Assembly (NCBI GenBank): GCA_900088475.1 | Contig: FLMG01000355.1 | Location: 62,001 to 126,000, forward strand | From: Hyphochytrium catenoides | Taxonomy: Eukaryota > Protista > Hyphochytriomycota | Reading direction: 5' to 3' | Length of the DNA stretch: 64,000 nt | Part shown: piece after piece, positions 16,101 through 31,159 of the stretch | Layout of the letters: every line of letters starts with the position of its first letter | Position numbering within the stretch: position 1 is the first letter of the stretch | Notes under the pieces: model-generated | What the model was told of the DNA's origin: nothing | What the model saw: only the letters and a program-made list of their open reading frames with translations | Database searches by the model: none | Position numbers and translations under genes: made by a program

Positions 16101-19100
16101 GATAGAATTTGGCCTAGGTTAACCATGGGCCTGGGACAGGAAGCTATCGAAGTACCTCTCTGTTCTTTGGCTGTAGATAGCGATTACGATGACTCTGTTT
16201 TGCTCAGCAATCCACAGCACTCAGCTGACGGGTCTTCAATATTTGACTGTGAGGATGACGTGGCAGCCCTTTGCTCCATTGGCTGGTGCCGGTAAGTCTG
16301 TTCCTAAGCCTTACATATATGAAAAGACGTCTTCTCTTAACATCCGCCGTTCCCAACTCCAGCCATGACGCGGCGTCAAACTATCTTGACCTAGAAAACA
16401 TCTCTATGCATTGCAAAGGATATATCCAAGATTATTGCCGCACAACCAGCTGGGGCAACGATGGGGGTCACCCCAATCTCTGTAACTCTCCTTCGCTTTG
16501 GCAATCGTTCTTAGGGATGAACGACAGTGATACAGGTTGCATGCCAGATGTCATGTCTGATGCCAGAAGCAAAACCCAGACGGATCGGCCGGTATCCATT
16601 TTGAGTACATCACTAAATGAGGGTGGGATTCAAGCTGCGGAAAGTATCCACCTGGTTTATCTTATCGTCTCTCAGGCTCCACTGAATAGGACAGAGTTCC
16701 ATTTCCGCACCAGAAATGGGCTGGCCGTAGCACAACCGCCGAGTATTATTTTTACACCCGCGAATTGGACACAAACTGGAGTACTTCTGGTGACCCTACA
16801 TGGGGGCGCTTCTTCACCGGTGGCATGGGACGCAATATACCTTGAAGGGCCCAACGGGGCGCAGGCATCGAATGACATTAGCGTGCGTGTCCAGTCGTGG
16901 CTGCCTAATGGTTCAGCAGCACTGTTGGATTCCGTAAGGAGAGTGAGAGAAACTTGGAGCCAGATGGTACGGTCTATCCGGGTCATCTCCAGTAACGAGG
17001 TCCTTTTGCATAAGGTACAACTGATCATAAACCATGCCCCTCACATGGCTGATGACGCCCTGCAAGTGCTACAAACGGTAGGGAATAGTACAGCGGAGGC
17101 GCCAATAGCGAACGTGACCGTAGCTTTACATAGACTAGCCCTTCCCTGGCACCCGACAACAACTTCCTTGGAGATCTCAACTATCTACTGCCCAGAATGG
17201 CTGATTTGTTCTCCAGCAGTCGACGACAGCTTGATTGAGAGGGACCGCTTATTGAGTTGGTGGATGGGTAGCAACCAAGAGACGGCGGCGGCCCTTCATG
17301 ATAACTTACTTGATGGTATTTGGAACACAACGATAGGACGCATGGAGGTGCTTGGGTCGACGGGTGTCTTGCTGGTCCCCGCCACAAACAACTGCTCGGA
17401 TTGTTCTACCCCACTAGTCTTCAACCATTTGATGTATCAACATGGTGGAGAAGTACGAGGATATTGGAGGAAGATATCGCTTCTTGATGGCTTTCCCCTG
17501 CCTTTAAATATAAGCCTGCTCGAGAAAACTCTGACCATTTCGGGGGAGCTAGTGGGGTTAATGACCCCACAAGGGAACAACACCTACTTTACAGGCACTC
17601 GCTTGTGCTCAACCCAAGATGCGGCGAACAAGGTTCAAAAAATTACCGGGTTCTCCTGTCAATGGACAGCTCTCAATCACTTCAGTACACCTGCCTTCCC
17701 CTCAAAAGATGTCAGCCAGCTTAACTCACTCCTTCCTGTTCCTGGAGGACGCTGGCTGGAAGGAGTTTGGCTCTTCCAGAACTTTGGAAGGCTTGAAGTC
17801 CTGGGCTCAAGGGCTACCTTGTCCCCTATATGGAACTTGACTGTGGATAGCTTGATCTATACTTCGACGTCACAAGCCGTTCTGTACGTAAACGAAAACA
17901 TCCTCACTCCTTCTGGCCAGCTCCTTCACACCTGGTTACTCATTGTCTCTTTCAAGAGAGAAGGAGTCATCTACGCTCAGCTCACAAAAAGCACGGAACA
18001 GCTGCAGGAAAGTAGATTTGCGGCTTATGACGGCACTACCAGCTGGGGTTATCTATGTCCATCATGTACCTATACAAGTCTATGGACTGAGCTCCAGAAA
18101 ACCAGCGAATATTTTGCTGGGCAGTGCAGATTCGAACGGCATCAGGATGACATCTGTCAGAGCCCTTACCGAGGATTTGGCCACCAAGTGGACCCCAATG
18201 CGTTTCGTGGTAGGCAGAGGGAGAGCGTGATCGAGGAGCGCAATCCAAACTTTATACCCCTCTTTTGGCCGGACGTAGTTGAAGACTTAAGACGTCCAGA
18301 TACATTCCTGTTGCGTATGGTCAATATGCTGTTGCAACTAAGCCACCCTTTGCTGAAGCTGCTCATCGCCGTCCAGACAGTAGGGGATCATCTTGGTGGT
18401 TGTCCATTTGGACAATATCATCCACTAACTCCTTGCAGATATATTGCCTGTGGGACAGCAGATGGCCATGGCGACTGTTTACTAGAAATCCTGCACTACT
18501 GCATGTGGCTAGAACCGGAGGACCTTGGCTGTGTAAACGTAATGGCTGAGGTGACTGGCAACGTGGGGTCCACTGCTCAGAAGCTCTTTCTACCGCTTCT
18601 GGACTCTGTGAATCTGCCACCGAGTAGCTGCTCAATAGTGCAATCTTTTGGCATCCAGGGTTGTCATCAGAATCAGTCACTAGTAAATGGAAGTGATAGC
18701 TGCTGGATCGACTATTCAAAGAATACTACTAACGATAGTTGCTACGACGACCAGTGCCTTGACGGCGCGTGCCACATGAGTGGACCCCAAGGCAACGGTA
18801 ACACAAGCGGTGGAGGGAGTCAGCCCACTGATCCGCTATCCATGCTTATCACTAGTCTCGCGGGCCTTAAGCTTCCTTCTGGCCAAGGGTACGTCGAGAT
18901 TCCAGCGGTTGGATTGAGTCTGGATGCGATAAGATCGAATAGTACGCAACCCATTGTCCTCTCCATTCATTCCAATGACACTGAAAACCTTCCTGCTGCC
19001 TTTCTGGTGTGTAACGGAACGTCTATAGAGGCACTCAGCCTATCGGTAGAATCCACTTGCATTCATAGTCAGTCAGTCTTGCTGGACTCAGAGGGGGTTA

Positions 19101-22100
19101 ACACCGTAGTTCGGTTCATGGTGAACACTGGGATATCCTACTCATCCGAAGACTCAGCTACAATATTCACTGGCTTCTGGATCACCGCAAAGGTATACAT
19201 TTCTAACCAACCAAAGGTGACTTGGTTCAATGTCCAGCTTCGGCTTTTCCCAATGCCTAACACAATGGGCACGTTCACCGTTCATTACTTAACGCCTTGG
19301 TAAGCATGTCTCCAACTTCATTTAGCTTGAGGACCTACCCTCACTGCCGTCCCTGTTAAACCTATTAACCCCCTAGGCAAACTGTCATGAGATTATATGC
19401 GGTTGGTACCGAGGACCTTCAAGTGTCTTTAGTCTCAACAAGACCACTAAAGATCAGATCAGTATTTGATGAGACACCTAGGACTAACACGCTTAACCTG
19501 AAGGCAAAACCTTTCGTGGACCGAATCCCTCTTGCTCTTCATGTGCAAGCTCTTCCAATGAACTTCACCTTGCTTCCATCTGCGATAAGGCTAGCATCAG
19601 GCGACTCTTCGGCAACAAACCTTACCAGCAAAATTTGGCAGTGTAGCCTTGCAGACGTTGCCCAGGCCCAGCAATCTGCCTTAAACTTGTCTGAACTTTT
19701 CAATCATGAGGAAGCGTACTATGCCATGAGCCAAGGGCTGGATTGTCCGTTTACAAATGAGACTGACAGTATGAATCCTTGTACCTCCCCAGTTTGCAGG
19801 TGAGCGCAAATTTAATCGTTCTTCAGTATTGTTATACCTTACTCCGATTCTAGGATTGAACCCCAATCCCCTACCAGACAACTGGATATGTGTGCAGAAT
19901 ATGTCCGCGACTACTGCTCGTACTACAAGCCAATGGATGATAACCTTGTCAGTGCCTCTGCCGGCTGTAACGTCCAATGGATCGTGGATTGGACTATGTG
20001 GCGGTCGGTCGCACGCGTACATAGATTCCCTTGCAACCCAGTCATATCTCTGGGGGAAGGAGTTCAACAAATGAATGTCGCTAACTTAGCTTCAGGACTC
20101 TTTCTTTGGCCACTGAACTTCTGGGATGGGGGCAGAGTGCCTATTGTGGAAGAAGCCAGACTTCTCGTAGGATGTAGTTCTTGCAGTCGGATAGGCTCCT
20201 TCCACTTGTCTTACCAAAGCAACAGCAATCTCGCATTCAACCTCACCCCGACCTCCACTAACACCACATCTGCAGACTGGACCTTACCTTTAAGGCTTTC
20301 TTTCAAGCCGACGATTTGGCAACAAAAAGGTTCTATCCTGATTGACCACATAAACCTAGGCTTGACTCAAGGCAAGGATGGGACATCTTGGACCAACGGA
20401 CTCACAACCAGGTTTATACGAACATCTGGCATACGGCTCGAAACGTTGTCGGACGGTCAGCTCTTTCAAACGGGCATAGATGCGTCTATTTCAAACATTA
20501 CATTTTTGGAGACTACATCTATCACACTTCGAATTAGTCTTCTTGGGACACCTCTGAGCAACGTCATCATCAGCATGACAACACTTGGGGGTCCGATTGG
20601 TCCGTTTCTATCACTCGATCGCCCTCAGGTGACTTTTCTCCCTAATATCGCAAATCAAAGCCAGCATGTGGTAATGACAGCAGGTCGGGACTACATCCCT
20701 ACAGATAGAAACGCCACCATATCCCTGCTATCTTCAAGTGATGACCCTCTCTTTAGAATCAGGCCCTGTATGACAGGACAAGCTTCTAGTAACCTTACAC
20801 GCGTATTAGAGGACCCTTGGATGATGGGAAGCTGGGAGCCAGCTGATAACATGACAGAAGGTACAATGATCGCGAACATTAGCGGGGAACGAGGATACAT
20901 GCAAGTATTTACTGGTAGCGTGAGCCTACCTACCGAGATTTGGTTGGGATCCATCTGGTACTTGAGCAACAGCCTAGCGACCGGCCAGTGGTACAATTTA
21001 ACAAGCGGTTTGCAGAGGGGAAACTTTGAAGCACGTTCTATCGGGACAGACAAAATAACCCTGACCTTGAGCTTAGGGGACATCTCTAACTATAGCAGCT
21101 GGACGGTGCTTCGATGTAATACCAACTGCAGAAGGGTGCTCGTTCCTCCCACAGGCACTTCGCAGACCTGGTGGGAAGGAAAATGGACCAATGACACTTC
21201 AGGCTCCCTTCTCGAAATTGCAAACGGGTACGGTCTTCTGGAGCCTGGCACTATCCTTAACCAATTCAAAGCACTTGCGCCAGATGCAGTGGATGGGCGC
21301 TGGTTTGATGTGAACTCCGATAACCATGGATTCTTCTCACTCCAGAGGAAGATGCTTGCGAGAGAAGACTCCAACCTCACTATGTATCTCCACGGCATCT
21401 TTCACAATGTCCTCAGCAATGAAAAGCGATTTACAACGTTCACGCAATGGTGTTCTGCCAACGTCTCCTCGTGCATGGAAGTGCAATCACCACCTAGATC
21501 TTCATCATCCCTGTTTAACTGGCTTGGTATCAGACCAAACGAATCAGGTGACCGTAGAGGTGCATGGTATGATGCAGTTTTAAAGGTATCGAACTTTGAA
21601 GGGCAATGTCCCTTTGAGTGGACGAGTCCAATCAGTCCTTGCAACGTCCGAGCATGTCAGGGGTCGGAGTCTACAGAGGCTTGTCTGGACTACATTTGGG
21701 ACTACTGCACTTGGGATCCTGCTAATGCCGTGTGCCTAAATATCGTCACCGCCCTCCACCACCAGAAGGGTTTCGAGTTCATGGAAAGACTCAAAGAGAA
21801 GCCTTGCTCCCCGACCACTCAGGTGATCATCAAGAATGTTGATGTCCCTTCCCTGCTCCTCTCTCGGCGAAGCATTATACTCTCGGATAACAGCTCTAGT
21901 GGCCAGCCTGATGCTTCCATAGCTGTCTCGCTTAGCACATTACCAACTAGGTTAGTCAGGATCAAACTTAGCTCTGGAGCGATAGATGTCATTGCCAATG
22001 TGAGCATCCTGAACTTTACAGAAGCAAATTGGTACCTTCCACAGGTCTTTCGGCTGTCTTTAGACCTGTCGGACACCATGACTGGAAGCGGATTGTCAAG

Positions 22101-25100
22101 CACTACGCTGCAAGTTTTAACGGATGATAGTTCCTATGCCCGCCTCCCAAATACAACTATCGAAGGTAGGTTACGTGATTCTAGTCGCACAAAGATTTGA
22201 GCTTGACTGATTCTTGACAGTTCTGACAAGACGAATAGTGAAAGATGCTCCCCAAATGCTTTCTGCTGTCCAGATGGACAATGCCGACGTCATTTTGATA
22301 AGCTTCGATCAGCCAGTGACCACAGATCGACTTGAGTGCACACCACAAGGTGTTTTTGACTCCCAGACATTGCTAAAGCTGGGGAGTAATCCAACTTGTT
22401 CATGGGTAAACTCAACGCTCTTAAATGTCACTCTCAGCGCAGGAGTAGAAGAGCAATCAACCACGCTGAATGGTGGGGAAGTGATAGCGGTAATTCCCGG
22501 GACCATAAAATCAATTCGTACTGGCCTTGCAGTGTCGGGTGCGGTAATTTTAACTGGCCGAACTGCGCCACCGACACTTGTCGGCGCCACTTTTGCTGAT
22601 TCAGGAGCATCTTTGAGCGTTCTATTCAGTGGAGTCACGGACGGAAGAATCGCCGGCAGGACCGGTGTGGTAGATTGTGCGCTGGCTTTCAGTGATCAAA
22701 CGCTTTCTTACCTTGGTACGGGGTGCACATGCTTCTGGGAGAGTTCATCCAGTTTGGGTGTTCGACTGGGCCGCAGTGCTACTATCCTGCCCGGAACGAT
22801 GGACTTGCTTTCTTCCAGCGGTGATCCCAGCTGCCGTTCGGGGAGTTCACTTAGTCTCCGCGCTGCAGCCATCAAACCGGTGCCGTCTAGTGTCGTCTCA
22901 GCTTCTGGATGTCTTCCCATCGGCCCACCGAAAAATCCTCCAGTCGTTCAGGTAGTGCTAACTGGGCCGACAACATTGGGTTTATGCGAGGACTTGCGCT
23001 TAGATGCCTCCCTTTCGAGAGGTGGCGGCGGTAGGACCATGCTTTTTACATGGAGCGCCTCCTCCCCTGACGAGGTAAGGCAAAGCCTTGGCAGTCTTCA
23101 CCTCCGCTCCCAAGGTGCTAATTGCTCTTACTGCAGGCCATCAGTAGTACTCTAGAAGAGCTATTAGCCAACTCCTCCTCTTCCAAATTGTTGGTTCCTG
23201 CCGCATTTCTCAACGGGGGGTCGAGGTACGACATCGTAGTGCAAGCCACTAACTTCCTTGGGTCCCAGACAACGGGTACCCTATCAATCAGAAAGTCCGA
23301 CATGAGCATTCCGAGCGTGAAGATTGCCGGCGACGCTGCAAGGTGAAACATAAGCCACTTCTTTCAATCCAAACGCTAGAAAGATTATGAACATGGTGCC
23401 TCACATCATACAGATCGCTTAAAAGAGATGAAGAGTCAATTATTAGGGTTGAGGCCACCATTTCCAGCTGTTCAAATGCTTCGTCTACATCCGAAGGCAC
23501 TGCAGCTTTGAACTTCAGATGGTTTCAAAACCCGGCCGATGAAGATCAAGTGTCGCTCAGCAAGTTTCTCATGAGGGATCCCCGAGCTATAAGAGTGCCA
23601 CCGAACACCCTGACAACCGGGAAAAGCTACACTTTCAGATGTCTGGTGCTCAACACAGGAAATAGCTCAATCAACAATACAGCGTCGGCCTCCGTTGCGA
23701 TAATCCCGAGCGACCTTGTGACCAGGTGGGGAGATCGAATGAGAGCTCGATGCTGACTTCTAACGTTTTCCTGGTCATAGGATAAACGGAGGTGACAGAA
23801 CCGCGGGCACTGACGATGTTATTACCATTGATGGCAAGCCGTCTTATGACCCTGATGGAGCTCCGGGATTGGCCTCATTTAATTGGAGCTGCTTATCTCG
23901 ACTGCCTTCGGATCCAGAGTTGAGACCATGCGTATCATATAGGGACAACGCAGTGATTGACCTCAACAGCCTTGTCGGCACTCCTTCCAGGGACACCGTC
24001 GTCATTCCTGCTGCGACATTCTTACCCAAGACTGTGGTCATGGTGATGCTCAATTATAGTAAAGTTTCTACTAACGAACTGATAGGTAGCCGATGGAAGG
24101 GAGCCTTCACTACGTTAACAATGTTGGCGGGTGCACCCCCGGCTGTTTCTGTTTGGAGTGTTATGACTTCTCGAAAAGCTGATCCTGGAAGAAGGCTTGT
24201 CCTAAATAGCTCTGTGATTTCTAGGACTAACGACATCGCCCTCCTTTGGTCGATTGTAAGTACTTCCTACCTCTAATCTTTCCCCATCAGATCTCACTTA
24301 GAAAGTCCTACAGGATGAAATCGCGGCTATTGGCGGCAACGTATCCTCTCTTTGTTCGACAGGATTGACTGGGGGGGTTCTAGTGGTGAGATCTGGCGCA
24401 CTTGTCCCAGGGTCAACCTACACTTTTTCGCTTCAGGCCAGCAGCAGAAACGGTATTGGAAGCGGCCAGATTTCCATAATTGTCAACGCTCCGCCTACAA
24501 GCGGGTTCATCACAGTCGTACCTGTGGAGGGCTTCGTCCTCCAGACGACATTTTCAATCACAGTTTCTAGCACCTGGGCGGATGACCCTCTAGATTTTCC
24601 CCTGAGTTACTGGTACAAGTATATTCCAGGGAATGCCTCAGGTCTATCAGAGGAGATTGCCATAGCACAGGAGGCGGCTCTAATTTCATCTTATCGAGAC
24701 GTACCTACTTTCTCCACCATGTTGCCCCAGGGACGCGGTACAGCGTTTGTCAATACGGTAGTGGTGTACATTTCCGACGTGCTTGGTGCATCTACCAGAT
24801 GTACAACCTTTGAGGACAGCACCGCTTCTCTTATTAGAGTCAGACCCTTCACCATAGAAGGGCCGGCCACTAACAACACCTCTGGTCCGAAGACGGCCTT
24901 CCTTTCCAATAGCACAACCAGTCTGCTTCAGCAATCGCAATCCACCGGGGCAGACTCCGTCCTTACCGTAGTAAGTATTCTTGGAGGCCTGTTGGCTGAT
25001 CCTTGTAAAGGGGTTGATTGCGGGAGACAAGGATCATGTTCAGAAGGCTCCTGTGTCTGCCTCAACAGCTTCACTGGCCCAACCTGCAAAATTCCTCCAC

Positions 25101-28100
25101 CGGTGAACGGAGGTTGGTCATCTTGGTCTGAATGGTCTGCTTGCACTGTTAGCTGTGGGGGTGGCAGTGAAATTCGCAGCAGAACTTGTACAAACCCGCC
25201 ACCTAGTGGCGGAGGTAATCCTTGCGACGGAAATTCTTCAGAGAGTAGGGTCTGCAACACACAACCATGCGTTGTCAATATCGGTAGGGCATGGAACCAA
25301 ATGATCGTAATCTGCTTTTGCGACTGATGACTTTACGTTTACAGATGGCGGCTACTCGGCGTGGAGTCCTTGGACTTCCTGCTCTTCTTCGTGTCCAAAC
25401 GATAGGGGTGGTATGTTTCCCGGAAATCGAACCCGGACTAGAACATGCACCAATCCCACGCCGTCCGCTGGAAGCAAGGATTGCCGTGCTCTAGGCCCGG
25501 CAATAGAAGTAACAGGCTGTAACCTTAGCCCTTGTCCCTTCCCATTGCCGCTATGCCCTCCCTATCCCAGAGGTAGCGACAGACTACATGCTCGCATCAT
25601 TCGTACATGAGCTAATCCGTGGATTGCAGGGACTCCGATGGCGTACCAACTCGCAGAGAAACCTGAGTGCTCTGGCCATGGAATCTGCACCCGGGAGCGT
25701 GGATGCACTATCAGCAATGGATGCGAATATTCCTGTATTTGCGGCGAGGGCTGGAACGGTGATGACTGCTCAATCAGTGATGCGGAAATGGAAGAGAGAC
25801 GCGCCATTAGGGAAAAGCTGCTGGAAGCCATGGTCTCCGCTTCTACCGCCATTGTAAGCTCTTTGACCCTGAGGCCACCCTCACTGAAACTCCTCCCTAA
25901 TGACTGGATATACCACAGGACCCTTCACCGCAAGCTTTGTCCCAGGGTGCCGATTCGCTACTAACTATCACTTCGTCGCCGAGGGAACTCAAGCCCGAGA
26001 CCACTTCCAAAGCACTAGATTTCGTGTCGAACCTAATCACGACGTCCGCTGCCATTAGTAATGTGCCAGAGCGAAGTACCGGAAACAATATCCTTAGTGC
26101 TGTGGGGAACATCTTCATGGCAACGATGCAAAACCGGCAATTACAAACCCAAAGCAGCATCAAGGGCCGACGGCGGTTGGAGGAAGGAGAATCTGGCCGC
26201 CTAAAGAGAGCCAGTGATGCTGTGCGAGGCGCCATCACTGGACTCGGTACATTATACCTTTCCAATGCTATACCCGGTGAAGAGCCAGTAGCCGTTCTCA
26301 GCGAGACACTAAGTCTCGTAGCGGCTAGATCCAACCTTGAAGGAGCAGGTAGGTATCGGCTGTTCCATACTGTGAGGCCTAACGCTAAGTGGCAAATTCC
26401 GACTACCTCTAGACCTCTCACTCACCGATGGTGGGAGCATCAAGATCCCGCAAACTGATTCCTCTCCAGGCTCAATGGACATCCAGGTGAGCTTCCTTTC
26501 GAGTGTTTATCTCGTACACTGTCTCAGAAGCTACTTCTGAATGACCTCCAGGCCGTTCAATGGGCTTCTAATCCAGTCTTTTGGAGCGCAAACAACGAAA
26601 CCCTGTCCTCGCCTGTCCTCACTATAACTATGGCGCCAACCGGGGTAAACGCAGACGAACAAGCAATGAAAGGCCTAAACACACCTATCCGGGTCCGTAT
26701 GGCTCTTAAGTATCTCCCACCAGGTACCGTCCTTCAGCTTGTGAAGCAGACAGACACATGCCTAATAGTATCCCCCTAAAGATGGGCCTCCTGACTGTCG
26801 GTATTGGGATAATGCCACGCAACAATGGATAAGCGAGGGTCTCATCCAGCGAGGGGTCACCATCGAGAGTGATGGGTCTTTCTACCTTGACTGTGAAACG
26901 ACCCACCTGACAGACTTCAGCTCGGCAGGTGCACCATTCCTTCCAGCCGTCAATCAGGTACGCGGAATGGCTTATACCTTTTCGCTCTCAGCATGGACAA
27001 ATTCCGAGAATAATTGCTGTGCTTAGGTTAACCCCATTGCAGATGCGGCTCTGTTGGCCAAGTACTCAGAGAACCCAAAACCTCTCATCATTCTATGTTC
27101 GGTACTGGGTGGCTTCATCTTATTCGGGTTGCTAGGCTATTGGGCGGATAGGAGAGACGCTAAGATCATTGAGGCGTTCATGGAGGAGACATACATGAAG
27201 CATGGATGCATCCGTGAGGACAATGACGCTGCAATCAAGGATCTTGGTGCTATTCGGGTCGACCTGAGAGTGCCACGGAGCGGACGCAATGGCCGAGATA
27301 AGAAAGAGCCGCCCAGCGCTAGCGTTTTGCCAAAACTGTGGGCTAACTGGATGGCCAGCATTAAGGCGATTCTGGTTACCTATCGGAAGAAGAGCAAATG
27401 GGTTAGCATTTTGGCTCCTCTACCGTCATCGCACGTAATGCTCACCAGACCTCAACGCATCCTTGTCCTATGCGGAACTGTCATGGTATCCTTTACGGTT
27501 AGTGCAGTCTTCCACGGCAAGAGGCAGAGTAAGATTGCGGCTATCGTGGCTGTCCCCATCTTTTCCATTCTTGCTATGGCACCAATAGAAAAAGGAATTG
27601 CGCTTGCCTATCGCAAGCTGCAGAGTCCAACGACGTCGATGACCCTTGCAAAGCGCAAGTCATCGAAGGTTAGCAAGAGCAAGAGGTTACCCGTCAAGAA
27701 AATCTCAACGATGAACCAAAAGAAGGTTGTTGCCATCACCACTGAGAGCGAATCCCCTCAACAACTAGAGCTTTCCGTGCAACCGGAGTTAGATAGAAAT
27801 CGACCGCCGCCGCACAATGACAGTCTAAAGGAGCTAGCTATTGATGCTCGGTTTCCCAAGGAGTGGAATACACAGACAAGTCTTACGAAGAAGAAGTACA
27901 CAGCAGTCGGCGGTCCTCCGATAGCTCAAGAAGTGCCAGCCACCACTACTTCGCGGGTGAACCTGGCGTCGATCAAAGTATCTAGGACTTCACGTTTAGT
28001 CCTTGAAGCAGGGGAAGAGGTGAAAGACTATGGCGATGTACTAGAGAAGCTACGGATAGAAGACCTTGGCTTTCCCAAGCGATTGTTGGCAGCGGTAAAG

Positions 28101-29138
28101 GTCGTTAACATATTCTTCATCGTTCTGGACTTCTGTGCATTCGGAATAGCTCTATACATGGCAATTGATCCGGAGGCCGCTGAGGGATACGCCGGCTATT
28201 TTGCATTTATTCCAGGTCTTCTAGGTCTCTGTGCCATCTCCACACACATTTACGGAGTGATTGTACTCAGACGCCATCATTCTCTTAACATCGGGATCTA
28301 CTCATTATCACAACTTATCTTAGCCGGAGCTATGGGTTGTATGGCTCTGGTGTCATACTTGATCACCAGCGTCACTTATTTTAGAGAGCTAAGTCTTACG
28401 CAGATTGGCCAGGCTTGGAGAGGTGCGCTAAATAATCAATCCGCTGCTCTCGCGAGTGGGAACACCAAGGATGATGGCACTCCTCTCTGGATAGAAGGGC
28501 TGCAAAAGCTTCTTAACTGCTGTGGTTTTGATGGCGACGACTTCATCAATGAGGAATATGCGGGCAGAAGTATGTGTCCATCCGACCCAGATGGGCACTG
28601 TGGACCTTTGTTGATGAACCTCTTTCAGGATCTCATTTTCCCTTTGCAGACTGGCCTGTGGGTGTCAGGGTGTGCTTTCGTTGCGTACACCTTACTCCTG
28701 CAGCTTCTTGCAGTGCGGTTATATAAAGCACAAAAGGTTCGACGGCAGCTTGAGAAGGAAGTCCAACAAGGGCTTACTGAGAGAGATCTGCTGCCAGATG
28801 GCAGAGCTATCACGCCAGGCATTCAAGCTTCTGCCATCAAGATTCAAACACAGTACCGAACCTATCAGGCTCAGAAAAAAGTCAACCGACTTCGAGAAAT
28901 CAGAGGGTGGAAGCAGCATATGAAGCGCCAGAGGAGCCTACTCTTCCTGATATATGCCACAGCCATCGCAATAATTGCGATGTGCTTCTATATCAACCTG
29001 ATATTTGGAGTAAAGTTCACGCCTGAGCAAGCCGACCAATGGCTACTGAGCTCACTTATCTCAATGGCCGTGGACATGTTCCTTAAGGAACCCGTTGTGA
29101 CCTTCTTTGTGGCAGTTAAAAATCTCTATATAAGGTGA
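13193..29138 (+). CDS. Giant polycystin-1/REJ-GAIN family membrane protein (~4,900-5,000 aa, ~16 short introns): signal peptide, unassigned repeats, REJ, EGF, 2x TSP1, EGF, GAIN/GPS, PKD-type TM1-3, embedded tetraspanin, IQ, PKD-type TM4-5
   Basis: Consecutive long + strand ORFs are separated by ~60-nt GT-AG introns. REJ-type VLTGPTTLGLCEDLRLDAS...FTWS and VNAPPTSG; TSP1 GGWSSWSEWSACTVSCGGG; GPS CRYWD...WISEGL...CETTHLTDF; PKD1-type WVSIL...LTRPQR and FGVKF...WLLS...DMFLKEP. Confidence 0.88.
22936..24795 (+). other. REJ (PKD/REJ-like) domain region of the giant receptor
   Basis: Typical REJ beta-sandwich segments: LRLDASLSRGGGGRTMLFTWS, IDGKPSYDPD...FNWSC, LVPGSTYTFSL, VNAPPTSGFITVVPVEG...TTFSI...W.DD..DFPLSY, YISDVLGAST. 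Confidence 0.8.
25000..25770 (+). other. EGF - TSP1 - TSP1 - EGF-like cassette between REJ and GAIN
   Basis: CKGVDCGRQGSCSEGSCVCLNSFTGPTC; VNGGWSSWSEWSACTVSCGGGSEIRSRTCTNP; DGGYSAWSPWTSCSSSC...RTRTRTCTNP; CSGHGIC...CICGEGWNGDDC. Confidence 0.88.
26769..26957 (+). other. Exon encoding the GPS motif of the GAIN domain (HL|T autoproteolysis site at 26904-26912); not in the ORF track
   Basis: Manual translation YPPKDGPPDCRYWDNATQQWISEGLIQRGVTIESDGSFYLDCETTHLTDFSSAG, flanked by ...aatag and gtacgc splice sites. Confidence 0.9.
28077..28724 (+). other. Tetraspanin-like 4-TM module embedded in the polycystin ORF
   Basis: KRLL..VNIFF (TM1), TM2, IYSLSQLIL (TM3), large loop WIEGLQKLLNCCG...C...GHC, and TM4 with a polar Q (LLLQLLAV). 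Confidence 0.8.
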
Positions 29139-29261: not shown

Positions 29262-31159
29262 CTATCGAGCGCTTGAGCCGAGGGTTCTCTTGTCATAAGA
29301 ATATAAGCTATGCACACTTCCCTCCCTTTGTGCCGCAGGCGTCCTCAATTCAAAGCATAGGTCGCCAGAAATAAGGCGCCCATGAAGGTCCTTCACGCTC
29401 CTTGAACCTGCGTCTTGGATGCCATGCTTGATACCCTGTACCAAGTAAGGAATATATTTCTTTAAAGAACCCTTGTCCACCACAGAGCCACTGACTCCTT
29501 GTGCCACCTTAACCTGGCTATTCTGGGCAAAATAGCGAGTGGACGAGCCCTTCGTCATCGCCTCAATCGAGCCCATGCCTCTGTATTTCTTGACGCGCAC
29601 ACCATCCTGGAAAAAGTACTGACCCGGTGCCTCTTCAGTGCCAGCGAAAAGAGATCCACACATAGCCACAGATGCTCCCTGAAAACAGCTATTAGAGATG
29701 GGTTCAAACTCTCATGACGAGCAACCTACCAGTGCTAGAGCTTTCACAACGTGACCAGAACTGCTAATACCGCCGTCTGCAATAATGGGAATGCCATACT
29801 TGCGTCCGAGTCGAGACGTGTTGAAAACGGCGGACGCTTGAGCTCTTCCCACAGCACAGACCTCTTGCGTAGTGCAGATGGAGCCAATACCCATTCCGAC
29901 TCGTAGACCATCTACTCCAGCCTTGATGAGGTGAAGCGCCTGAGAGGAGGTAACTACGTTGCCTCCAATAACGTCAAGCTTTGGGTACTTTGCCTTCACC
30001 CATTTTATCAAGTCTAGCTGAAATCTGTCCAGGAGCTGACTTTAAAAGCTACGCTTCTATAAAACTCAATAAAGGACGTACACTGAGTCACCCTGAGAGG
30101 AGTCAATGACTAGCACATCGACACCAGCTTCCACCAGAGCATCCACGCGAACCCTGTCATGTTCTCTCGTCCCAACTGATGCGCCAACAAGCAGCTGCAA
30201 GTTAACAAGACAAAGTGGAAGGCTGAGTTCGAACAGGATAACAAACGGAAGTGTAGTTCGTACTTGCTTGTTACGGTCCTTGGAAGCTAGAGGAAAATCT
30301 CGAGCTTTGGTTATGTCACTCCTTGATATCAGCGCGACGAGTTCTCCCTTATCATTGACAATTGGGAGCTTTCCTTTCTTGCTCTTCTTCAGTATCTGTA
30401 TAAATCTGTTGGCACTTCGAAAGAAATATTTTAGGTAGCACGCACGTGATTACCTCGTTTGCCTGTGGAAGGGTGCACTGCTCCTGGGCAGTAACAAGGT
30501 CTGAGATCATGACCTCTGACAGCTTAATGGTACGATCCTCGTGGAAGTCGATATCCCTGCTGGTCACAATGCCCACCAACTTGCTGCCAATCTTGCCATC
30601 TACTGTTATAGGAATGCCGGCGAAGCCATGTGTAGCTTTTATGTTGTCTACGTCTGCCAGGGTGTGATCGGGCCTGCAAGTGTGATAGATTATGACCGAG
30701 AAACAAACGCTCAAGCTTTGATAAGACCATCTTACGAGAGGCACATAGGGTCCGTGATAAATCCATTCTTGAACTTCTTCACCTTCCGGACCTGCGCGTG
30801 CAAAGATTAACCTGCGAAGCTTTATTTTATATTTTCCAACCCAAGCCTACCTCTCGACTTTGTTCTTCCACAGTCATGTTATAGTGAATGATGCCAATGC
30901 CACCATGAAGGGCCATTTGGATAGCCATCGCATGTTCAGTTACTGTGTCCATGGGTGAGCTCACCAGAGGCAGCTGAAGGGAGATATTCTTGGTCAAGCG
31001 GGTTTCGAGAGATACATCCTCCACTGGGAACTCCACATGTCCAGGCATCAGTATAATATCGTCATAGGTGTAGCTAATGTGGTGCGGGTTCTTCACGAAG
31101 ATGGCCTCTGCACTGTACCCATCTGGTCCAGCAATCGGTTGATCGTCGTAACTGGCCAT
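29262..31159 (-). CDS. IMPDH: Inosine-5'-monophosphate dehydrogenase with CBS subdomain; multi-exon
   Basis: [35 protein letters not shown] region [12 protein letters not shown], catalytic [34 protein letters not shown]. Confidence 0.97.

What the first reader, a model, noticed from the sequence alone, without database searches (positions are those of the whole stretch)
27054..29138. Polycystin-1-like receptor with a complete tetraspanin inserted in its TM3-TM4 cytoplasmic loop
Seen in one uninterrupted ORF, so not a gene-model artefact. It begins with PKD1-type TM1 (followed by DRRD), the PKD1 TM2 lead-in WVSIL...LTRPQR, TM3 and a basic loop. Then come four TM helices with tetraspanin hallmarks: K-x-LL...N-x-FF in TM1, Y-x-x-x-x-L in TM3, a large loop W-x-x-x-LQ-x-x-L-x-CCG (28518-28526) with two further Cys (a 4-Cys EC2 as in CD9/CD81), and a polar Q in TM4. 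PKD1-type TM4/TM5 (FGVKF...WLLS...DMFLKEP) close the protein. Topology is self-consistent, because a tetraspanin enters and leaves on the cytosolic side (9 TM in total). Established: tetraspanins are normally free ~250-aa membrane organisers, and some (CD9/CD81) partner GAIN-domain adhesion receptors in trans. Inference: here the organiser is hard-wired to a GAIN receptor, which could be an undescribed self-scaffolding adhesion or mechanosensing system. I know of no described protein with this architecture.
Basis: partly seen in the sequence, partly recalled or inferred. Interest (0 to 1): 0.92.

Follow-up and report, generated by a model that had tools for sequence, protein, structure and literature searches.

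The report
Polycystin-like receptor with built-in tetraspanin
A protist gene encodes a self-cleaving surface receptor related to human polycystin-1 whose membrane part contains a whole tetraspanin (normally a separate small membrane organiser) plus a calmodulin-type IQ motif, a natural fusion suggesting the two protein families work together.

Summary
The ORF 27054-29138 is real. It is the last exon (27027-29138) of one large gene: REJ, EGF, TSP1, GPS, then nine membrane helices. The four middle helices and their cysteine loop (CCG at 28518-28526) are a true tetraspanin domain. This copy is below Pfam's cut-off (22.9 vs 32.1 bits). Three paralogs in the same genome (46.2, 42.3, 32.7 bits) and relatives in other species (up to 54.1) pass it. 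A profile of the module matches solved TSPAN7, TSPAN15, CD9 and CD53 over all four helices (E 2e-8 to 3e-6).

Profiles of the two flanks each pick human polycystin-1 as best membrane match, at TM2-3 and TM4-5, in order. So the tetraspanin and an IQ motif lie where polycystin-1 has a cytosolic loop. There is no PLAT domain and no channel part.

The architecture recurs in transcripts of deep-branching stramenopiles (Cantina, a bicosoecid, Platysulcus). Public databases call these proteins only 'PKD/REJ-like', and I found no paper describing the fusion.

This scan had already noted the same architecture on other DNA of this genome (the paralogs).

Function (built-in clustering or curvature sorting, calmodulin feedback) is inferred, not tested. 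Whether the module was gained or lost along the family tree is unresolved. No RNA run was listed for this organism.

The parts
22247..24808 (+). REJ-domain exons of the ectodomain (several frames, short introns)
   Evidence: Pfam REJ 71.8 bits on 24380-24808. Full-length relatives align colinearly from 22247 onward.
25004..25775 (+). EGF, TSP1, second TSP1 and EGF-like modules
   Evidence: TSP_1 51.2 bits at 25118-25270 and EGF at 25004-25093. Second TSP1 at about 25341-25523 and an EGF-like module at 25662-25775.
25934..26713 (+). Region between the EGF modules and GPS, presumed GAIN subdomains
   Evidence: Aligns to the matching stretch of relatives P0130 and P0127. No Pfam family matches. 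'GAIN' is inferred from position only.
26790..26921 (+). GPS motif; H-L-T codons at 26904-26912
   Evidence: Pfam GPS 27.3 bits against a cut-off of 22.5. Sequence read.
26958..27026 (+). 69-nt phase-0 intron (GT..AG) joining the GPS exon to the membrane exon
   Evidence: The junction position and flanking residues are conserved in paralog L003.
27027..29138 (+). Terminal exon: 703 codons plus stop, encoding all nine TM helices
   Evidence: (open frame 703 aa).
27078..27143 (+). TM1, directly after the GPS stalk
   Evidence: Hydropathy 2.36.
27342..27689 (+). Conserved N-flank module: H/K-W-x-S...T-R-P-Q-R, then TM2 (27453-27518) and TM3 (27531-27596); equivalent to polycystin-1 TM2-TM3
   Evidence: Alignment A1. 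Its profile hits polycystin-1 6a70_B 241-333 at E 5.6e-4.
27597..28085 (+). Basic, Ser/Thr/Pro-rich cytosolic linker, poorly conserved
   Evidence: It stays open in all paralogs.
28086..28718 (+). Tetraspanin domain: four TM helices (28086-28166, 28197-28268, 28302-28382, 28644-28718) and the large outer loop 28383-28643
   Evidence: Pfam PF00335 at 22.9 bits here and 32.7-54.1 bits in paralogs and orthologs. Profile A4 hits TSPAN7, TSPAN15, CD9 and CD53.
28518..28526 (+). CCG motif of the large outer loop, with two further Cys downstream
   Evidence: CCG and the last Cys are invariant in 14 to 16 family members.
28827..28880 (+). IQ-type motif in the cytosolic stretch after the tetraspanin
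   Evidence: Pfam IQ 15.3-18.2 bits, below the 20.3 cut-off. It is conserved in the family. The profile hits IQ segments of RSP23, Sp17, myosin-Ic and Nav channels.
28935..29114 (+). Last two TM helices with F-G-V-K-F...W-L-x-S...D...P; equivalent to polycystin-1 TM4-TM5
   Evidence: Alignment A2. Its profile hits polycystin-1 6a70_B 531-600 at E 1.4e-3.

Best explanation
Shown. This is the membrane exon of one large gene for a surface receptor of the REJ/GPS kind.
- It has a huge ectodomain (unknown Cys-rich repeats, REJ, EGF, TSP1) and a GPS self-cleavage motif next to TM1.
- Its membrane core is homologous to the first five helices of polycystin-1. It has no PLAT domain and no channel-like half.
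- In the place where polycystin-1 has a long cytosolic loop between TM3 and TM4, this protein carries a complete tetraspanin domain followed by an IQ motif.
- The family is old and spread among deep-branching heterotrophic stramenopiles. This genome has four copies.

Inferred.
- The ectodomain binds an external ligand or surface.
- GPS cleavage leaves the two halves held together, as in polycystin-1 and adhesion GPCRs.
- The built-in tetraspanin does in cis what free tetraspanins do for their partners: it sets the receptor's lateral clustering or its sorting to curved membrane (flagellum, feeding surface or shed vesicles). Its outer loop may also sit against the membrane-proximal GPS region.
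- The IQ motif recruits calmodulin, so calcium feeds back on the receptor.
- Calcium could enter through separately encoded polycystin-2-type channels. This genome has at least four such loci.
For: - One gene: relatives are colinear over 21.9-29.1 kb. GPS passes Pfam. The intron is conserved with the paralog.
- Tetraspanin identity: Pfam above cut-off in three paralogs and in P0001, P0008, P0010, P0096 and P0066. The module profile hits TSPAN7 at 2.1e-8, TSPAN15 at 1.5e-7, CD9 at 3.7e-7 and CD53 at 3.2e-6, over profile positions 4-196 of 217. CCG and the fourth Cys are invariant. The top seven Foldseek hits are all tetraspanins.
- Polycystin-1 core: two independent flank profiles hit polycystin-1 TM2-3 and TM4-5 in order.
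- Real fusion: there are four single-frame copies, and relatives are single transcriptome ORFs of Cantina, Bicosoecida sp. and Platysulcus.
- Topology fits.
- Partner channels exist in the genome: PKD_channel at four or more loci.
- Published links: polycystin-1 colocalises with TSPAN4 (PMC10487028). CD9-type tetraspanins mark cilia and ciliary vesicles and sort to curved membrane (PMC12258979). GPR56 associates with CD9/CD81 (PMC5382171).
Against: - No functional datum exists for any member.
- No RNA run was listed for this organism, so expression and splicing of this copy are unproven.
- This copy itself is below Pfam's tetraspanin and IQ cut-offs.
- The structural match is weak: Foldseek E 0.03-0.14 and TM about 0.3. 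An exhaustive aligner gave only generic helix bundles.
- Co-folding of the module with the flanks gave no verdict.
- Some relatives have four helices without a CCG loop, or no helices at all, at this site. The tetraspanin is therefore not indispensable to the family.
Confidence: 0.6

Rival explanations
1. The module is a true tetraspanin, but its job is not lateral organisation. Its large outer loop acts as an intramolecular cap or ligand site on the GAIN/GPS region and controls exposure of the tethered stalk. This would resemble the way TSPAN15 holds ADAM10, or CD81 holds CD19.
For: The outer loop and the GPS stalk lie on the same face of the membrane, a few helices apart. Solved tetraspanin-partner complexes appear among the matches: 8esv ADAM10-Tspan15 and 7jic CD19-CD81. 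The loop's Cys framework is the most conserved part of the module.
Against: No contact was predicted or tested. The only co-folding job did not include the GPS exon and gave no verdict. Relatives without the loop keep GPS (P0002, P0072).
Confidence: 0.25
2. The four-helix block only resembles a tetraspanin by convergence (any 4-TM unit with a Cys-rich loop) and is not a tetraspanin by descent.
For: This copy is below Pfam's cut-off. Global structural scores are weak and an exhaustive search is non-specific. The CCG-less four-helix blocks of relatives show no tetraspanin signal (hhalign probability 13%).
Against: Eight family members pass Pfam's curated cut-off over nearly the whole profile. 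The family profile hits four different solved full-length tetraspanins at E 2e-8 to 3e-6, and the isolated outer loops of Sm-TSP-2 (2.8e-5), CD9 and CD63 (E about 0.02-0.03), with CD81 and CD82 weaker (E 0.4-0.8). The CCG...C...C register is kept.
Confidence: 0.04
3. It is a gene-model or assembly artefact: two neighbouring genes (a receptor and a free tetraspanin) read as one, or the module removed by splicing.
For: No transcript data were available for this organism.
Against: One open frame of 703 codons has receptor-type helices on both sides of the module. The same arrangement occurs in three further single frames on other contigs and in single assembled transcripts of three other species. 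P0001 aligns end to end at E 1e-75.
Confidence: 0.03

Closest known systems
Human polycystin-1 (PKD1), N-terminal membrane domain (PDB 6a70, 8z6b)
   Same: REJ domain, GPS motif next to TM1, the H-x-W-x-S...T-R-x-Q-R lead-in with TM2-TM3, and the W-L-L-S...E-P-type TM4-TM5, in the same order.
   Different: No PLAT domain after TM1, no channel-like TM6-TM11 and no C-terminal tail. The TM3-TM4 loop holds four extra helices (a tetraspanin) and an IQ motif.
Sea urchin REJ and PKDREJ-type receptors (PKD1 family; PMC1934368, seen)
   Same: A large modular ectodomain with REJ and GPS; some members have a reduced number of helices (own knowledge).
   Different: None is reported with a tetraspanin domain. 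Searches of papers for the combination found nothing.
Free tetraspanins CD9, CD53, TSPAN7, TSPAN15
   Same: Four helices, short first loop, large second loop with CCG and two more Cys; profile match over the whole domain.
   Different: Those are free proteins of 200-350 aa with both ends in the cytosol. Here both ends continue into a receptor chain. The conserved polar helix residues are not kept across the family.
GPR56 with CD9/CD81 (adhesion GPCR and tetraspanin complex; PMC5382171)
   Same: A GPS-cleaved adhesion-type receptor working with a tetraspanin.
   Different: There the partners are separate proteins and the receptor is a 7-TM GPCR. Here they form one chain, and the core is polycystin-like, with no 7tm family match.
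Relatives in the same stramenopile family (UniRef A0A7S1C6T6 and A0A5A8D1M8, both named 'PKD/REJ-like domain-containing protein')
   Same: The same flanks and the same site. Many have the same tetraspanin and IQ.
   Different: Some carry four helices without CCG, none at all, or a RhoGAP domain in this loop.

Membership tests
Tetraspanin (Pfam PF00335) | Four TM helices with a short first outer loop, a short inner loop and a large second outer loop | tested here: met
   Helices at aa 348-374, 385-408, 420-446 and 534-558 of the exon product. Loops are 10, 11 and 87 aa.
Tetraspanin (Pfam PF00335) | CCG motif plus at least two further Cys in the large loop | tested here: met
   CCG at 28518-28526 and two Cys downstream. 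CCG and the last Cys are invariant in the family.
Tetraspanin (Pfam PF00335) | This copy reaches Pfam's gathering score (32.1 bits) | tested here: not met
   22.9-23.9 bits by hmmscan and 26.2 bits in the genome scan. Only profile positions 7-152 are matched.
Tetraspanin (Pfam PF00335) | Close homologs reach the gathering score, and the family profile finds solved tetraspanins | tested here: met
   Paralogs score 46.2, 42.3 and 32.7 bits. P0001 scores 54.1, P0066 40.8, P0008 37.2, and P0010 and P0096 33.0 each. Profile A4 hits TSPAN7 at 2.1e-8, TSPAN15, CD9 and CD53.
Tetraspanin (Pfam PF00335) | Tetraspanin three-dimensional fold | tested here: inconclusive
   The model has pLDDT 79. The top seven Foldseek hits are all tetraspanins, but E is 0.03-0.14 and TM about 0.3; the CD81 loop alone gives TM 0.57. 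The exhaustive aligner is non-specific, with Z up to 10.8.
Polycystin-1 (PKD1) family | REJ domain and a GPS motif next to the first TM helix | tested here: met
   REJ 71.8 bits. GPS 27.3 bits against a 22.5 cut-off, with H-L-T present.
Polycystin-1 (PKD1) family | PLAT/LH2 domain in the first cytosolic loop | tested here: not met
   No PLAT match at E up to 10. The loop is 103 aa. The one PLAT locus in the genome lies elsewhere.
Polycystin-1 (PKD1) family | Conserved TM2-TM3 and TM4-TM5 segments | tested here: met
   Flank profiles hit polycystin-1 6a70_B 241-333 (E 5.6e-4) and 531-600 (E 1.4e-3) in colinear order. The scores are modest, at 22.8 and 21.7 bits.
Polycystin-1 (PKD1) family | Channel-like six-helix C-terminal half (11 TM in all) | tested here: not met
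   No PKD_channel or Polycystin_dom match. The frame stops 7 aa after TM9, and an IMPDH gene follows on the other strand.
Polycystin-1 (PKD1) family | Autoproteolysis at the GPS | not testable with these tools
   Only the H-L-T triad can be read from the sequence.
Adhesion GPCR (class B2) | Seven-TM secretin-like domain after the GPS | tested here: not met
   No 7tm family among the Pfam matches. There are nine helices with a different arrangement.
IQ calmodulin-binding motif (PF00612) | Profile match, and binding of calmodulin | tested here: inconclusive
   15.3-18.2 bits against a 20.3 cut-off in this copy. The motif is conserved in the family, and the profile hits IQ segments of solved proteins. 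Binding was not tested.

The most novel reading that the evidence does not exclude
The fusion is a 'Rosetta stone'. It would record an ancient and general partnership between polycystin-1-type receptors and tetraspanins that still operates between separate proteins in animals, for example human polycystin-1 with TSPAN4 or CD9/CD81. In that partnership the tetraspanin would control receptor sorting to cilia or shed vesicles, or the exposure of the GPS stalk. That would give kidney-disease research a new, testable class of polycystin-1 partners.
Probability: 0.15. Interest if true: 0.85.

Novelty: new variant of a known kind. Interest (0 to 1): 0.62.

Why it matters
Tetraspanins are known as free organisers that act through weak, hard-to-map contacts with partner receptors. 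Which partners matter for polycystin-1 is an open question.

A natural chain that welds a tetraspanin into the polycystin-1 membrane core argues that the two families cooperate physically. The welded form has been kept in four diverged copies in this genome and in several deep stramenopile lineages. It also fixes the geometry: same membrane, the outer loop on the side of the GPS stalk, and a calmodulin site right behind.

The fusion gives a model for studying a tetraspanin-partner pair at fixed 1:1 stoichiometry. It suggests concrete experiments on human polycystin-1, which already colocalises with TSPAN4 (PMC10487028). It also shows that the TM3-TM4 loop of polycystin-type receptors is a site where whole membrane domains, and a RhoGAP domain in one relative, can be accommodated.

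Tried and rejected
- Whole-exon word-based protein search: no hit in the allowed length range. The same search with module alignment A4: no hit. Both blanks are uninformative, because the tool has length and word limits.
- ESM Atlas by features: no usable hit.
- phmmer of the single module against solved structures: only noise. The family profile was needed.
- Single-sequence AlphaFold model of the whole exon: pLDDT 40.5, unusable.
- Exhaustive structural search: generic helix bundles only.
- Co-folding of the module with the two flanks: no verdict, score 0.00. This is evidence neither for nor against packing.
- RNA evidence: no run was listed.
- hhalign of the tetraspanin module against the CCG-less four-helix blocks of relatives: no homology shown.
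- My first splice proposal (26929-27042) was wrong. It was replaced by 26958-27026 after comparison with the paralog.
- Reading the four helices as a voltage-sensor-like or channel half: rejected. The last two helices match polycystin-1 TM4-TM5, not its channel helices, and no channel family matches.
- Tree of the flanks to date the gain: the backbone is unresolved, loop labels were crude (the CCG in P0019 is probably spurious), and a single clade of CCG-bearing members is rejected (p-AU 4e-7). No direction is claimed.
- Four literature searches found no description of the fusion.
Full report
**1. What is in the sequence**

The ORF 27054..29138 on the + strand exists exactly as described (694 aa). 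The TTG is only the first possible start after a stop. The frame is open from 27027.

The stretch just upstream, in the same frame, reads as a classic GPS motif (Cys-x-Cys-x-T-H-L-T-D-F). Pfam GPS scores 27.3 bits against a cut-off of 22.5.

My first guess for the intron was wrong. Comparison with the closest paralog shows the same junction in both genes...T-H-L-T-D-F-S-S...N-Q | GT...AG | V-[N/D]-P-I-x-D-A... The intron is therefore 26958-27026 (69 nt, phase 0) and the last exon is 27027-29138.

Further upstream on the same strand lie:
- REJ (71.8 bits), EGF and TSP1 (51.2 bits);
- a second TSP1 and an EGF-like module in other frames.

Four full-length relatives align colinearly from about 21.9 kb to 29.1 kb. 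This is one gene of at least 13 kb, and the finding covers its membrane exon. The gene ends there: an IMPDH/CBS gene follows on the opposite strand.

**2. Membrane anatomy**

Hydropathy gives nine helices in a 1 + 2 + 4 + 2 pattern. With the GPS outside, the layout is:
- the loops after TM1 and TM3 are cytosolic;
- the four middle helices enter and leave on the cytosolic side;
- the 87-aa Cys loop is outside;
- the IQ stretch is inside.

Lys/Arg within 15 aa of the membrane is 25 of 108 residues on the proposed inner side against 6 of 69 outside. All four loop cysteines fall outside.

The low-conservation linker (aa 195-340) is still coding. The chance of 146 stop-free codons is about 7e-4, and it is open in every paralog.

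**3. Is the middle block a tetraspanin?**

In this copy Pfam Tetraspanin matches at E 7.9e-5 with 22.9 bits, below the 32.1-bit cut-off, and covers only profile positions 7-152. The answer comes from the family.

An exhaustive phmmer search of 1.84 billion representatives gave 121 relatives. P0001 aligns end to end (E 1e-75). Several long proteins align across the module and the C-terminus.

Scores against the Pfam tetraspanin cut-off of 32.1 bits:

| Protein | Bits |
|---|---|
| P0001 | 54.1 |
| P0066 | 40.8 |
| P0008 | 37.2 |
| P0010 | 33.0 |
| P0096 | 33.0 |
| Paralog L003 | 46.2 |
| Paralog L005 | 42.3 |
| Paralog L004 | 32.7 |

The three paralogs match over profile positions 4-223 of 225.

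A 14-sequence profile of the module hits solved full-length tetraspanins over all four helices and the loop:
- TSPAN7, E 2.1e-8
- TSPAN15, E 1.5e-7
- CD9, E 3.7e-7
- CD53, E 3.2e-6
- then the isolated loop of Sm-TSP-2 (2.8e-5), those of CD9 and CD63 (E about 0.02-0.03) and full-length UPK1B (0.04), with CD81 and CD82 loops weaker (E 0.4-0.8).

The signature W...Q-x-x-x-N-C-C-G-[F/W]...C...G-C is conserved, with CCG and the last Cys invariant.

Structure adds little. With the alignment the model reaches pLDDT 79. The top seven Foldseek hits are all tetraspanins, but with E 0.03-0.14 and TM about 0.3. The loop alone superposes on the CD81 loop at TM 0.57. An exhaustive aligner returns only generic helix bundles.

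I rest the identification on sequence profiles.

**4. Are the flanks polycystin-1-like?**

Pfam has no model for these helices and found nothing. However, the two flanks are conserved modules that co-occur in at least 35 long relatives.
- A profile of the N flank (H-x-W-x-S...T-R-P-Q-R, TM2, TM3) has human polycystin-1 as its best hit in the Protein Data Bank, at the H-I-W-L-S-I-W...F-T-R-I-Q-R segment (E 5.6e-4).
- A profile of the C flank hits polycystin-1 further along the same chain, at ...A-W-L-L-S-S...E-P-L-K-V-L (E 1.4e-3).
- The IQ part of the C-flank profile hits IQ segments of RSP23, Sp17, myosin-Ic and sodium channels.

Each score is modest. But two independent profiles land on the same protein in the right order, next to REJ and GPS, and that makes homology the simplest reading.

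The tetraspanin and IQ motif therefore occupy the position of the cytosolic TM3-TM4 loop of polycystin-1.

Two defining features of polycystin-1 are absent: PLAT, and the channel-like half. I therefore call the protein polycystin-1-like in ectodomain and N-terminal membrane core, not a member of the 11-TM family. The genome does encode PKD_channel domains at four or more other loci and one PLAT domain elsewhere.

**5. Distribution and history**

Named relatives come from Cantina marsupialis, Bicosoecida sp. CB-2014, Platysulcus tardus and Cafeteria roenbergensis. The rest are metagenomic. Several are single transcriptome ORFs that carry REJ, TSP1, GPS, tetraspanin and IQ together. This shows the fusion on cDNA in relatives.

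In this 61-Mb assembly, four of the six loci that match Pfam Tetraspanin are these receptors.

On a tree of the flanks alone, the window, its three paralogs and P0001 form one supported, all-tetraspanin clade (100/97).

At the same site, other relatives have four helices without a CCG loop (no detectable tetraspanin signal) or no helices at all, as in polycystin-1 (P0005, P0037, P0057, P0086, P0087, P0091, P0098). One has a RhoGAP domain there.

The backbone of the tree is unresolved, and loop content has changed more than once. So 'inserted' is a statement of position. The polycystin-1 state suggests gain, but I could not root the tree.

**6. How it probably works (inference)**
- A large adhesive ectodomain is cleaved at the GPS and held together, as in polycystin-1 and adhesion GPCRs.
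- The built-in tetraspanin gives each receptor its own organiser. The likely roles are lateral clustering, sorting to curved membrane such as flagella or shed vesicles, or docking of its outer loop on the membrane-proximal GPS region.
- The IQ motif directly behind the tetraspanin would bind calmodulin and couple the receptor to calcium.
- Separately encoded polycystin-2-type channels could supply that calcium.

Published parallels:
- GPR56 associates with CD9 and CD81 (PMC5382171).
- Polycystin-1 colocalises with TSPAN4 on retraction fibres and migrasomes (PMC10487028).
- CD9-type tetraspanins are enriched in cilia, mark ciliary vesicles and sort to curved membrane (PMC12258979).

None of this was tested here. 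A co-folding job gave no verdict.

**7. Novelty**

Four full-text searches found no paper describing a REJ/GPS receptor with a tetraspanin domain. Public records call relatives only 'PKD/REJ-like domain-containing protein'. I could not query InterPro, so automatic annotation of the combination may exist.

This scan had already flagged the same architecture on other DNA of this genome, that is the paralogs, including the one about 34 kb before this window.

I rate it a new variant of known kinds: both parts are known families, and their union in one chain at this site is undescribed.

Noticed in passing
window 29262-30744, minus strand: The 3' exons of an IMP dehydrogenase gene (IMPDH 117.2 bits, CBS 29.7 bits) converge on the receptor's stop codon about 125 bp away. 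This bounds the receptor gene.
   Followed up: partly
window 16271-19303 and 19888-22200, plus strand: Two giant upstream exons (1010 and 770 aa) have no Pfam family. They share a Cys-rich module of about 60 aa (C-P-F...P-C...A-C...C...Y-C-x-W), BLASTP E 7e-9. This suggests large tandem units of an unknown ectodomain repeat.
   Followed up: partly
relative P0092 (2530 aa), residues 2021-2135: A RhoGAP domain (41 bits) sits in the same TM3-to-next-helix cytosolic loop, ahead of four CCG-less helices. This loop seems to be a hot spot for acquiring signalling parts.
   Followed up: no
G000 contigs C4384:60105-60455, C1935:17028-17438, C48:3690-4097, C244:7705-8550; C2510:39825-40079: The genome has at least four loci with a polycystin-type channel domain (PKD_channel, up to 86.5 bits) and one PLAT locus. 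All are away from the four tetraspanin-bearing receptors.
   Followed up: no
G000 C1533:8145-8618 (-) and C1376:25546-25713 (+): These are the only two other Pfam Tetraspanin matches in the assembly, so most detectable tetraspanin domains of this genome are embedded in receptors. Earlier notes of the scan also mention double-tetraspanin fusions elsewhere in this genome.
   Followed up: no
relatives P0005, P0037, P0057, P0086, P0087, P0091, P0098: These family members have the same two flanks but no helix between them (loops of 12-581 aa). This is the 'empty site' state also seen in human polycystin-1.
   Followed up: partly
relative P0035 (654 aa): Ten tandem weak matches to the linker residues 237-272 of the query. 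This looks like a low-complexity repeat match, not a relative.
   Followed up: no
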